NCBI RefSeq assembly: GCF_021028975.2
Contig: NC_059439.1
Coordinates: 33,232,001-33,296,000, forward strand
Reading direction: 5' to 3'
Source: Sphaerodactylus townsendi
Taxonomy: Eukaryota
DNA length: 64,000 nt
Position numbers and translations under genes: made by a program. Of the stretch, positions 598 through 2,007 are shown in pieces (the first letter of the stretch is position 1; each line of letters starts with the position of its first letter). The notes beneath the pieces were generated by a model, which saw nothing but the letters and a program-made list of their open reading frames with translations, was not told the origin of the DNA and searched no databases.

Positions 598-2007
598 ATG
601 GCTGATGGAGCAGGCATGTCTACCTCTGAAGTGAACTCTCCTCTCTGTTACTTCAAAACTAATCGCAGAGGTCAGACAATTCGAAGTCAGACTCAGCAAC
701 TTATACTGAACGTGTACTCGCGCATTCGGGAAGATCAGCCGAGCCTTAGCATAGAGGAATGTGTTGGAGAAACCTCGAGGCTGACGGGTGTGTCGTCTGC
801 GCCCATCTACAGGGCAAAGAAGCAATGGCACACAGGAGGCGGAGTTCTCGGGACGCCGGGCAAGAAACGTCCTCGCAAATCCGAGACGAAGGGAAGCAAC
901 GTGAAGTGTGACAGCTCTGCTCGTTGCGCAATAAGAGCGATTGTACATAAGTATTTCTTCAGAAACGAGATACCCACGCTAAAGAAAATACTTAGTGATG
1001 TAAACGGCGACCCGGATCTGCCGTGCATTTCACAATCGACGCTGCACCGCATTTTGAAAGACATTGGCTTTGCCTACAATCGCCGACATAAGGATTGCAC
1101 ATTGACCGACAAGCCTGAGATCACAGCGTGGAGGCACCGGTATTTGAGAAAGATTCGCCAGTTTCGTTCTGAGGGGAGGAAGATCTTTTTTCTGGATGAG
1201 ACGTGGGTGAGCGAGGGGCACGCGGTCTCAAAATGTGGGCAAGACCAAATTGTCAAGCCAACGAAGGAGGTGTTCCTTAAGGGCTTGTCTGCGGGACTGA
1301 GAGAGTCGTCTGGGAAGGGGAGTCGCTTGATTTGCGCTCACTGTGGGAGCGAGGAAGGGTTTGTGGAGGGTGCGTTGCTTCTTTTTCGGTCTGCAACAGG
1401 CGATTACCATCAGGAAATGAACGGGGACAGCTTCGAAAAATGGTTCGGCGAGCTGCTGCGGAAACTGCCTCCCGAAAGCGTGATTGTTATGGATAATGCC
1501 TCTTGTCATTCTGTGACGTCTGAGAAGATCCCAACAAGCGGGTCCAAAAAGGACGCCATCAGGACGTGGCTAACGGAGAAGGGGATCTCTTGGGAGCCGG
1601 AGCAAGTTAAGCCTGAGCTTATCCTTCTGGTTCAAAGAGAAAAGCACAGGTTCGTTCGGTTTCGGGCAGACGAAATGGCGGTTGCTGCCGGGCATCAAGT
1701 GCTTCGCCTCCCTCCCTACCACGCGGAATTGAACCCCATCGAGTTGGCGTGGACTCAGATAAAAAGACACGTGGCGATAAACAACAACACCTTTAAACTG
1801 AATGACGTTAAGAATTTATTTGAGGACGGAGTGCATGCAGTGACTCCTGAGATGTGGAGCGGTTTTGTCCAACGTGTGACCGAAAAGGAGCAGCAATTTT
1901 GGGATCTTGACTTTCTCCAGGAAAACAACGAAACATCCCCACGAAAGATCCATTTGGGGTCAGACTCTGACAGCCCTTCCTCTGAGAGTGAAGAGAGCTA
2001 TGAATAA
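598..2007 (+). CDS. Intact IS630-Tc1-mariner DDE transposase, DD82E (Sailor-like)
   Basis: Uninterrupted 469-aa ORF. Catalytic motifs FFLDETW (D200), IVMDNASCH (D299) and LRLPPYHAELNPIELAW (E382), with 82 residues between D299 and E382. N-terminal HTH-like region, basic NLS-like PGKKRPRK, winged-helix-like PTLKKI...ISQSTLHRILKDIGF, acidic Ser-rich tail. Confidence 0.9.
   Translation: MADGAGMSTSEVNSPLCYFKTNRRGQTIRSQTQQLILNVYSRIREDQPSLSIEECVGETSRLTGVSSAPIYRAKKQWHTGGGVLGTPGKKRPRKSETKGSNVKCDSSARCAIRAIVHKYFFRNEIPTLKKILSDVNGDPDLPCISQSTLHRILKDIGFAYNRRHKDCTLTDKPEITAWRHRYLRKIRQFRSEGRKIFFLDETWVSEGHAVSKCGQDQIVKPTKEVFLKGLSAGLRESSGKGSRLICAHCGSEEGFVEGALLLFRSATGDYHQEMNGDSFEKWFGELLRKLPPESVIVMDNASCHSVTSEKIPTSGSKKDAIRTWLTEKGISWEPEQVKPELILLVQREKHRFVRFRADEMAVAAGHQVLRLPPYHAELNPIELAWTQIKRHVAINNNTFKLNDVKNLFEDGVHAVTPEMWSGFVQRVTEKEQQFWDLDFLQENNETSPRKIHLGSDSDSPSSESEESYE

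What the first reader, a model, noticed from the sequence alone, without database searches (positions are those of the whole stretch)
598..2007. Intact DD82E (Sailor-type) transposase in a vertebrate genome
Seen: an unbroken 469-aa ORF with the triad D200, D299, E382; hand count gives exactly 82 residues between the second D and E, far from the DD34E/DD34D of ordinary vertebrate Tc1/mariner. The ORF keeps many CpGs while its flanks are CpG-poor. Known (from memory, needs checking): DD82E defines the Sailor superfamily, reported in invertebrates, protists, fungi and bacteria and described as absent from vertebrates. Inference: because it sits in squamate repeat-laden DNA on the same contig as CCNB1IP1/TTC5, this looks like a real germline insertion, most simply by horizontal transfer from an invertebrate.
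Basis: partly seen in the sequence, partly recalled or inferred. Interest (0 to 1): 0.9.

Follow-up and report, generated by a model that had tools for sequence, protein, structure and literature searches.

The report
Sailor-type transposase gene family in a gecko
The gecko Sphaerodactylus townsendi carries an intact gene for a "Sailor" (DD82E) cut-and-paste transposase, a kind reported as absent from vertebrates, but it is an old resident, one of five selectively preserved copies, and not a fresh import.

Summary
Window 598-2007 is an unbroken 469-aa ORF with D200/D299/E382, exactly 82 residues between the second D and E, and CpG o/e of 0.95 against 0.30 for the window. The window is chromosome CM037628.2 of Sphaerodactylus townsendi.

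The protein is a Sailor-type IS630/Tc1/mariner transposase:
- Its nearest non-gecko relatives are arthropod DD82E proteins, at about 45% identity.
- Against a canonical IS630 DD34E transposase it carries one 48-residue insert.
- Its predicted fold matches the Mos1, Sleeping Beauty and SETMAR transposases.

It lies in a roughly 1.9-kb element (about 347-2239) with 26-nt inverted ends. Independent short-read contigs tile it at single-copy depth, which rules out contamination. Junction contigs from two related organisms share the insertion. The element's non-coding ends also occur as a high-copy, MITE-like repeat.

This is one of five paralogs in the same genome, and they form one clade. All five are intact and keep D-D-E, with dS 0.45-1.03 and dN/dS 0.14-0.21. 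Three have a 5' intron and one is fused to a KRAB box.

The best reading is an anciently acquired Sailor lineage whose surviving transposase genes are now kept by selection, so probably domesticated. No held paper reports Sailor in a vertebrate. No RNA data were available.

The parts
343..346 (.). Possible remnant of the left target-site duplication (TGTA). Sailor elements normally duplicate TATA.
   Evidence: Read directly from the sequence. At the equivalent place the paralog L002 has TATA just before its left end. Inconclusive.
347..374 (+). Left end of the element, with the left terminal inverted repeat (core 349-374).
   Evidence: Arms 349-374 and 2214-2239 match at 23 of 26 positions. 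A gapped inverted alignment extends over 349-421 against 2239-2169 with score 50, which none of 500 shuffles reached. Homology to paralog L002 starts at 342. Other genomic copies in run X9 start matching at 345-348 (table 8, records 25 and 26).
375..597 (+). 5' non-coding part of the element.
   Evidence: Window 342-534 aligns to L002 14744-14933 at 69%. Window 473-597 aligns to L006 upstream of the shared ATG. The 335-501 bin has about 280 times the summed contig depth of its neighbours in all four runs.
598..2007 (+). Intact Sailor-type (DD82E) transposase ORF, 469 aa including its stop codon.
856..879 (+). Basic PGKKRPRK motif (aa 87-94) in the linker between the helical DNA-binding halves. 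Probably a nuclear-localisation signal or an AT-hook-like (GRPR-type) motif.
   Evidence: Position. Kept in all five paralogs. It lies in the low-confidence linker between helices 67-79 and 106-121 of the model. The function is inferred.
1195..1197 (+). Catalytic D200.
   Evidence: Conserved in at least 90% of the 80 aligned relatives.
1492..1494 (+). Catalytic D299.
1519..1662 (+). The 48-residue insert (aa 308-355) that turns a DD34E spacing into DD82E. Predicted to form two helices.
   Evidence: It appears as a single 48-aa gap when aligned to an IS630 DD34E transposase. Helices 318-327 and 338-351 have pLDDT 95-98. P312, K318, W324, L325, K338 and L341 are nearly invariant in the family. 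dN/dS in the spacer is 0.06-0.20.
1741..1743 (+). Catalytic E382, in the NPIE motif.
2008..2213 (+). 3' non-coding part of the element.
   Evidence: Window 2008-2075 and 2116-2207 align to L006 downstream of its stop codon. The 2005-2338 bins have 130-210 times the neighbouring depth.
2214..2239 (-). Right terminal inverted repeat.
2240..2243 (.). Possible remnant of the right target-site duplication (TAGC).
   Evidence: Read directly from the sequence. It does not match the left side. Inconclusive.

Best explanation
Window 598-2007 encodes a complete Sailor-type (DD82E) IS630/Tc1/mariner transposase.

Shown:
- It has an N-terminal helical DNA-binding region with a basic PGKKRPRK linker.
- It has an RNase-H-like catalytic core with D200, D299 and E382.
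- A conserved 48-residue two-helix insert between the second D and the E accounts for the unusual spacing.
- It sits inside a recognisable element of about 1.9 kb (about 347-2239) with 26-nt terminal inverted repeats, in the nuclear genome of the gecko Sphaerodactylus townsendi.
- It is one of five paralogs on five chromosomes that form one clade. All five are intact, all keep the catalytic triad, and they differ by dS 0.45-1.03 with dN/dS 0.14-0.21 in every domain.
- The insertion is shared with related organisms.
- The element's non-coding ends also exist as a high-copy repeat.

Inferred:
- A Sailor element entered an ancestor of these geckos long ago, probably by horizontal transfer from an unsampled donor.
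- It transposed by cut-and-paste and mobilised short, MITE-like derivatives.
- Its few surviving transposase genes are now kept intact by selection on the host, meaning they are domesticated or on the way there. In three paralogs this went as far as gaining a 5' intron, and in one of those a KRAB repressor box was captured.

What the window copy does today is not known. Candidates are a still-competent transposase, a DNA-binding regulator of the MITE-like sites, or a host nuclease.
For: Identity as Sailor-type:
- DD82E spacing.
- 94 of 103 scorable homologs have the same spacing (counted to the E of AELNP; add 5 for NPIE).
- The named homologs come from arthropods that the Sailor paper lists as hosts, such as Acyrthosiphon, Ixodes, Parasteatoda and Myzus. 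The paper's own catalytic alignment contains the LPPYHCELNPIE motif 32 times and the same spacer pattern.
- There is a 48-aa insert relative to an IS630 DD34E transposase.
- The AlphaFold model has pLDDT 88.4, and its best solved matches are Mos1, the Sleeping Beauty catalytic domain and the SETMAR transposase domain.

Real germline locus:
- Contigs of run X2 at depth about 73, with zero differences, cover 1-400 and 610-2670.
- X9 record 24 spans 33-428, from the left flank into the left end. X6 record 21 spans 2171-2657, from the right end into the right flank.

Old and under selection:
- The five gecko proteins form one clade (SH-aLRT 100) on a stem of 0.47.
- All ten pairwise comparisons give dN/dS 0.14-0.21 at dS 0.45-1.03, and the constraint is uniform over the domains.
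- Each paralog is alone in its 90% cluster. No protein above 50% identity exists outside this genome among about 15 billion.
- Summed ORF depth is only about 2.5-5.6 times the flank depth, so there is no swarm of decayed copies at 85% identity or more.
- Contigs from the other species that cover the ORF have 0, 0, 0, 3 and 12 gap letters, against 7 and 33 in the flank contigs. Of the differences listed only outside this species, 9 are synonymous and 2 are not.

Host-gene features of the paralogs:
- L001 and L005 have an intron after a short first exon starting MADGA.
- L002 splices KRAB exons (Pfam KRAB E=2.9e-18) onto the same acceptor.
- The three share the 3' end of the intron.
- NCBI lists several transcript isoforms.

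Past mobility:
- Terminal repeats.
- 130-280 times higher summed depth over 335-501 and 2005-2338 in all four runs, plus records that match only 345-468.
Against: - No RNA data were available, so expression and splicing of the window copy are untested.
- The window copy still has both terminal repeats and an intact catalytic triad, as a mobile element would.
- The cross-species evidence rests on short contigs. None spans the whole element, and the D-organism ORF contigs (about 92% identity, against about 95% for the flank) could belong to a close paralog instead of the ortholog.
- The synonymous/non-synonymous count uses only the differences the tool chose to list.
- Depth summed over contigs is not a copy number, as the tool itself warns.
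- A CpG o/e of 0.95, even at synonymous positions, is hard to square with a long stay in a methylated genome unless the ORF is unmethylated in the germline. That was not tested.
- A paralog dS up to 1.0 seems too large for a family seen in only one annotated vertebrate.
- The tree had no non-Sailor outgroup.
Confidence: 0.6

Rival explanations
1. It is simply an autonomous Sailor transposon copy that is active or was active recently. The purifying selection seen between paralogs would then be selection among transposon lineages for the ability to transpose, not selection for the host. The five copies would be the latest insertions of long-lived subfamilies that also drive the MITE-like repeats.
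For: - Both terminal repeats are recognisable and flank a unit of typical Sailor size.
- The triad and DNA-binding region are intact.
- The ends are shared with a high-copy repeat.
- The ORF is CpG-rich, like a sequence not long exposed to methylation.
- The paper reports that Sailor families usually have low copy numbers.
Against: - The nearest copy in the genome is dS 0.66 away, and there are no young sister copies.
- All five known copies are intact, which is not expected of a transposon family decaying neutrally after insertion.
- The insertion site is shared with other organisms at 2.7-5% flank divergence, and ORF indels there are in frame.
- The terminal repeats match at only 23 of 26 positions, and the flanking 4-mers differ (TGTA against TAGC).
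- Three paralogs have introns and one has a KRAB fusion, and L001/L002 share collinear sequence 1.7 kb beyond the stop codon.
Confidence: 0.3
2. It is a recent horizontal transfer from an invertebrate into this gecko.
For: - Sailor is otherwise known only outside vertebrates.
- The relatives are arthropod proteins.
- The ORF is CpG-rich in CpG-poor surroundings.
Against: - The best outside match is only about 46% identical.
- There are five diverged paralogs in one clade on a long stem.
- The insertion is shared between organisms.
- The terminal repeats and flanking duplication have decayed.
Confidence: 0.05
3. It is contaminating invertebrate DNA or a chimeric assembly.
For: Only the unexpected taxonomic affinity of the protein.
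Against: - Short-read contigs from three samples of the same organism cover the flanks, ends and ORF at the same depth with no differences.
- Contigs from other organisms bridge the junctions.
- Four paralogs lie on other chromosomes beside ordinary vertebrate genes (PIG-X, a CCDC90-like gene, a death-domain kinase).
Confidence: 0.01

Closest known systems
Sailor (DD82E) superfamily of IS630-Tc1-mariner transposons (Shi et al. 2021, PMC8533490)
   Same: - DD82E spacing.
- The same conserved motifs around the second D and the E (DYHxEMN..., VIVMDNA.YHS, LRLPPYHxELNPIE).
- A spacer insert of about 48 aa (the paper reports 13 + 36).
- Transposase length of about 440-480 aa.
- Element size of about 1.9-2.4 kb with terminal repeats of about 25-40 nt.
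- The nearest relatives come from arthropod species that the paper lists as Sailor hosts.
   Different: - The host is a vertebrate, where the paper found none.
- Only about 45% identity to any outside member.
- The TATA target duplication is not preserved at the window copy.
- The terminal repeat starts CT(C), not the usual GT or CC.
- The copies behave like conserved single-copy genes, not like a decaying repeat family.
Host-transposase fusion and domesticated transposase genes of tetrapods, such as KRAB-transposase fusions and SETMAR (Cosby et al., Science 2021; own knowledge, not read here)
   Same: - Transposase ORFs kept intact under purifying selection.
- Upstream host exons spliced onto an acceptor just inside the transposase ORF.
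- One paralog (LOC125428705) carries a KRAB box.
- A family of related short repeats in the genome could serve as binding sites.
- The SETMAR transposase domain is among the best structural matches.
   Different: - The source is a Sailor element, which as far as I could find has not been described among such fusions.
- All five copies keep D-D-E, whereas many domesticated Tc1/mariner or pogo genes lose it.
- The window copy itself has no fused host domain and keeps its terminal repeats.
Canonical IS630 and Tc1 DD34E transposases
   Same: The same fold and catalytic motifs. An Acinetobacter IS630 transposase aligns across D299-E382, and the NCBIfam IS630 profile covers aa 58-305.
   Different: 48 extra residues between the second D and the E, about 12-15 extra between the two Ds according to the paper, and a longer N-terminal region.

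Membership tests
Sailor (DD82E) superfamily | A DDE triad with about 82 residues (range 78-111) between the second D and the E. | tested here: met
   D299 to E382 leaves 82 residues between. The same spacing is found in 94 of 103 homologs and in all five gecko paralogs.
Sailor (DD82E) superfamily | The spacer is lengthened by conserved inserts relative to the DD34-38E Tc1-type or IS630 transposases. | tested here: met
   A 48-aa gap (aa 308-355) against an IS630 DD34E transposase. The insert holds nearly invariant residues, and the excerpt of the paper's Data S2 shows the same pattern.
Sailor (DD82E) superfamily | Falls inside the monophyletic Sailor clade, apart from Tc1/mariner, Gambol, pogo and Zator. 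| tested here: inconclusive
   The gecko clade nests among arthropod DD82E proteins from species the paper lists as Sailor hosts. The paper's reference sequences and non-Sailor outgroups could not be loaded, so the formal test was not run.
Sailor (DD82E) superfamily | Terminal inverted repeats, typically 23-57 bp. | tested here: met
   349-374 against 2214-2239 match at 23 of 26 positions. None of 500 shuffles reached the alignment score.
Sailor (DD82E) superfamily | A 4-bp TATA target-site duplication. | tested here: inconclusive
   The window copy has TGTA on the left and TAGC on the right. TATA stands at the left end of L002 and near the presumed right end of L006.
Sailor (DD82E) superfamily | Terminal repeats usually begin with GT or CC. 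| tested here: inconclusive
   The window copy begins CT(C)TGTTCC and L002 begins CCCTTTTCC. The paper also lists CTGTC for Caenorhabditis nigoni.
Domesticated transposase gene | The coding sequence is under purifying selection. | tested here: met
   dN/dS is 0.14-0.21 in all ten paralog pairs and in every domain. Paralog comparisons cannot separate host-level selection from transposon-level selection.
Domesticated transposase gene | Fixed at the same site, and intact, in several species. | tested here: inconclusive
   Junction-spanning contigs exist in organisms C and D, and ORF contigs there have only in-frame gaps. No contig spans the whole element, and the full orthologous ORFs could not be read.
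Domesticated transposase gene | Loss of mobility, meaning the terminal repeats are lost or decayed. | tested here: inconclusive
   The window copy keeps recognisable repeats (88% match) but has mismatched flanking 4-mers. No repeat was found at L001 or L005.
Domesticated transposase gene | Transcribed as a host gene. | not testable with these tools
   No RNA run holds the stretch. The only indirect sign is that NCBI models list several isoforms for the paralogs.
KRAB-transposase fusion (paralog L002 only) | A KRAB box and a transposase in one spliced reading frame. | tested here: met
   In P0003, KRAB covers aa 8-48 (E=2.9e-18) and DDE_3 covers aa 370-496. The exons map to L002 12841-12972, 14492-14575 and 16911-18305. 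This is an annotation model, and RNA support was not seen here.

The most novel reading that the evidence does not exclude
Sphaerodactyl geckos have turned an anciently acquired Sailor transposon into a small family of host genes, the first Sailor-derived genes and the first Sailor sequences known in any vertebrate. The family would keep a working DDE nuclease and include a KRAB fusion that targets the hundreds of related MITE-like ends scattered through the genome.
Probability: 0.4. Interest if true: 0.7.

Novelty: new member of a known kind. Interest (0 to 1): 0.58.

Why it matters
- It extends the known range of a transposon superfamily that its describers reported as absent from vertebrates.
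- It gives a natural example of a Sailor transposase that has stayed intact in a vertebrate genome. That is of interest to people who look for vertebrate-compatible cut-and-paste transposases.
- If the domestication reading holds, it adds an independent case of transposase capture from a source family not seen before. The family shows stepwise stages side by side in one genome: an element with terminal repeats, an intronless gene, an intron-bearing gene, and a KRAB fusion.

Tried and rejected
- **Contamination or chimera:** rejected on single-copy contigs and cross-species junction contigs.
- **Recent transfer:** rejected on paralog divergence and the 46% nearest outside match.
- **The window copy as a retrocopy of an intron-bearing paralog:** considered because it lacks the intron. 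Rejected because it lacks the 31 nt of exon 1 that such an mRNA would carry, because it keeps the terminal repeats and 5'/3' ends shared with L002 and L006, and because the tree puts the intron gain on the L001/L002/L005 branch.
- **Search for solved relatives by sequence:** none at E up to 1. The fold search did succeed.
- **Search for shorter relatives with a 250-aa piece,** to catch fragments from other geckos and any C21orf140 proteins: only the known gecko paralogs and invertebrate-type hits came back.
- **Looking for more copies of the element's ends in the window and the paralog loci:** none beyond L002.
- **Downstream homology between the window copy and L001/L002:** not above shuffled scores.
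- **RNA evidence:** no RNA run was found. The acceptor-like site near 50 and the donor-like site near 2027 therefore remain untested.
- **Bacterial promoter and terminator scan:** uninformative, as expected for a eukaryote.
- **Scan's earlier notes by words:** nothing.
- **Neighbouring genes CCNB1IP1 and TTC5:** not checked.

Full report
**1. The observation**

The ORF at 598-2007 (+) is real: 469 aa, ATG start, no internal stop. D200, D299 and E382 sit in the motifs FFLDETW, VIVMDNASCHS and ELNPIELAW, and exactly 82 residues separate D299 from E382. CpG o/e is 0.95 in the ORF. It is 0.51-0.57 in the element's own non-coding parts, 0.19-0.51 in the host flanks and 0.30 over the whole window. 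CpG is undepleted even across codon boundaries, with class o/e of 0.90-0.99. Pfam DDE_3 is significant (E=2e-11), and the NCBIfam IS630 profile covers aa 58-305 (E=2e-19, below the equivalog cut-off).

**2. Where the window comes from**

A look-up of the exact protein places it on CM037628.2 (40.15 Mb) of GCA_021028975.2. That is the same assembly as proteins NCBI names Sphaerodactylus townsendi. Window position equals L003 position minus 9403.

**3. Is it a Sailor-type transposase?**

The paper that defined Sailor (PMC8533490) gives these features: DD82E (range 78-111) produced by inserts of 13 and 36 aa, terminal repeats usually starting GT or CC, TATA duplications, presence in 206 invertebrate species, and absence from vertebrates.

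- The named homologs of the window protein are all arthropod proteins at 38-46% identity, from aphids, beetles, spiders, Ixodes, ants and bees.
- Several of those species are listed as Sailor hosts in the paper's tables. Its catalytic-domain alignment holds the motif LPPYHCELNPIE 32 times, with the same spacer pattern as the window protein.
- 94 of 103 scorable homologs have the same D-to-E spacing (my pattern counted to the E of AELNP, five residues before the catalytic E of NPIE, so 77 there equals 82).
- An Acinetobacter plasmid IS630 transposase (DD34E) aligns across the region with one 48-residue gap, opposite aa 308-355.
- An AlphaFold model built on 80 relatives is confident (pLDDT 88.4, pTM 0.78). 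It shows N-terminal helical bundles, an RNase-H-like core, and the insert as two helices.
- The model's best solved matches are the Mos1 mariner transposase, the Sleeping Beauty catalytic domain and the SETMAR transposase domain.
- The ESM Atlas neighbours are arthropod "Tc1-like transposase" clusters and, by structure, bacterial IS630 transposases.

I could not load the paper's reference sequences or non-Sailor eukaryotic outgroups. Formal placement in the Sailor clade is therefore still open, although every feature of the protein that I could test fits.

**4. The element around the ORF**

- An inverted repeat of 26 nt (349-374 against 2214-2239, 23 of 26 matching) brackets a unit of about 1.9 kb. 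With gaps, the inverted similarity runs about 70 nt, and none of 500 shuffles reached its score.
- The left boundary is confirmed from two independent directions. Homology to the 5' flank of paralog L002 begins at 342. Contigs from another organism that carry other copies of the end begin to match at 345-348 (records 25 and 26).
- The flanking 4-mers are TGTA and TAGC, so a TATA duplication is not preserved here. TATA does stand at the left end in L002 and near the presumed right end in L006.

**5. Read-set evidence (contigs only)**

- Run X2, the same organism as the window, tiles 1-400 and 610-2670 with contigs of depth about 60-77 and no differences. That rules out contamination or a chimeric join.
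- In all four runs the summed depth over 335-501 and 2005-2338 is 130-280 times that of the neighbouring bins. Over the ORF it is only about 2.5-5.6 times.
- The tool warns that summed depth is not a copy number. Together with the records that match only the end, I read this as follows: the element's non-coding ends also exist as a numerous short, MITE-like repeat, while ORF-bearing copies are few.
- In organism D a contig spans 33-428, from the left flank into the left end. In organism C a contig spans 2171-2657, from the right end into the right flank. The insertion is therefore shared.
- ORF contigs are 96-98% identical in C and about 92% in D. They carry 0, 0, 0, 3 and 12 gap letters, against 7 and 33 in the flank contigs.
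- Of the listed differences absent from the window's own organism, 9 are synonymous and 2 are not.
- These points suggest selection on the ORF where it sits. They rest on short contigs and a partial list of differences, and the D contigs might belong to a close paralog.

**6. The paralogs**

Four further loci of the same genome encode 74-78% identical proteins: LOC125437708 (L001), LOC125428705 (L002), LOC125438901 (L005) and LOC125434339 (L006). They lie on four other chromosomes, and each is alone in its 90% cluster.

- The five form one clade (SH-aLRT 100) on a long stem (0.47) among arthropod sequences.
- All ten pairwise comparisons give dN/dS 0.14-0.21 at dS 0.45-1.03. The constraint is similar in the DNA-binding part, the catalytic core, the 82-residue spacer and the C-terminus.
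- All five keep D, D, E and the PGKKRPR motif.
- The window copy and L006 are intronless and start at a shared ATG context.
- L001 and L005 have a short first exon (MADGA...) followed by an intron of 0.9-1.8 kb.
- L002 splices KRAB exons (KRAB E=2.9e-18) onto the same acceptor and still carries a decayed relic of the old first exon and 5' end upstream.
- The three intron-bearing copies share the last 150-200 nt of the intron. L001 and L002 also share collinear blocks up to 1.7 kb past the stop codon.
- The tree groups these three together, so the intron arose once.
- CpG o/e falls from 0.95 and 0.86 in the two intronless copies to 0.52-0.74 in the others.

**7. Interpretation**

The protein is a Sailor-type transposase in true gecko DNA, which contradicts the stated absence of Sailor from vertebrates. 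No paper in the library reports otherwise. It is not a fresh transfer, because the family is old, diversified and conserved.

The usual fate of cut-and-paste elements is neutral decay after insertion. Here all known ORF-bearing copies are intact, each is unique, at least this one is shared between species, and three have host-gene features. I therefore favour domestication of the transposase genes (confidence about 0.6) over a still-active low-copy transposon (about 0.3).

Horizontal transfer as the ultimate origin is inferred from the patchy distribution alone. Among about 15 billion proteins, nothing above 50% identity lies outside this genome.

**8. Open tensions**

- Undepleted CpG in an old resident needs an explanation. 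Germline hypomethylation is my guess, untested.
- A paralog dS up to 1.0 seems large for a family seen in one annotated vertebrate. Faster change at CpG-rich synonymous sites, or diversification before arrival, could account for it.
- No RNA data were available.

**9. Earlier notes of the scan**

One note on the same stretch (s1-740887) proposed an immobilised, domesticated transposase wired into a host transcript. My results agree on selection and fixation. I could not test the transcript part, and I find that the terminal repeats are still recognisable.

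Noticed in passing
L002:12841-18305 (S. townsendi CM037616.2, LOC125428705): A paralog of the window ORF is annotated as a KRAB-Sailor transposase fusion of 569 aa. KRAB exons are spliced onto an acceptor eight codons into the transposase ORF, bypassing a decayed relic of the element's own 5' end and start codon at 14744-15020.
   Followed up: partly
window 598-2007 and all close homologs (precomputed Pfam column): These Sailor-type proteins carry the newer Pfam family PF27940, 'C21orf140-like'. 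Human C21orf140/FAM243A is listed as a predicted DDE endonuclease in PMC11377751. C21orf140 might therefore be an old Sailor-derived host gene. A search with a 250-aa piece found no such protein, so the link is untested.
   Followed up: partly
window 335-501 and 2005-2338: The non-coding ends of the element have 130-280 times the summed contig depth of their neighbours in four runs from four organisms. This suggests a numerous MITE-like family built from Sailor ends.
   Followed up: partly
window 3007-3841, 4176-4509, 4677-5000: Summed contig depths here are extremely high (10^5 to 10^7). Indel variants recur every 82 nt (3494, 3576, 3658), and ORFs in 3351-3675 encode a repeated peptide. This looks like a tandemly repeated, very abundant element, possibly a SINE-derived satellite of the kind described for squamates in PMC10702118 (title only, not read).
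   Followed up: no
window 2671-2783: A long CT-rich low-complexity run. The read tool skipped it as a repeat where contigs break.
   Followed up: no
window 7798-8916 (-): A 372-aa ORF with no Pfam match, called as a 350-aa gene in the record. Not examined.
   Followed up: no
L006:10149-11534 (LOC125434339): This locus holds an uninterrupted 461-aa ORF from the ancestral start codon (MADGVGD...). The NCBI model for isoform X1 instead uses an upstream exon spliced in at codon 25. Both are 461 aa long.
   Followed up: partly
window 33655-33746 and 51688-51778: Two runs of N (assembly gaps or masked stretches).
   Followed up: no
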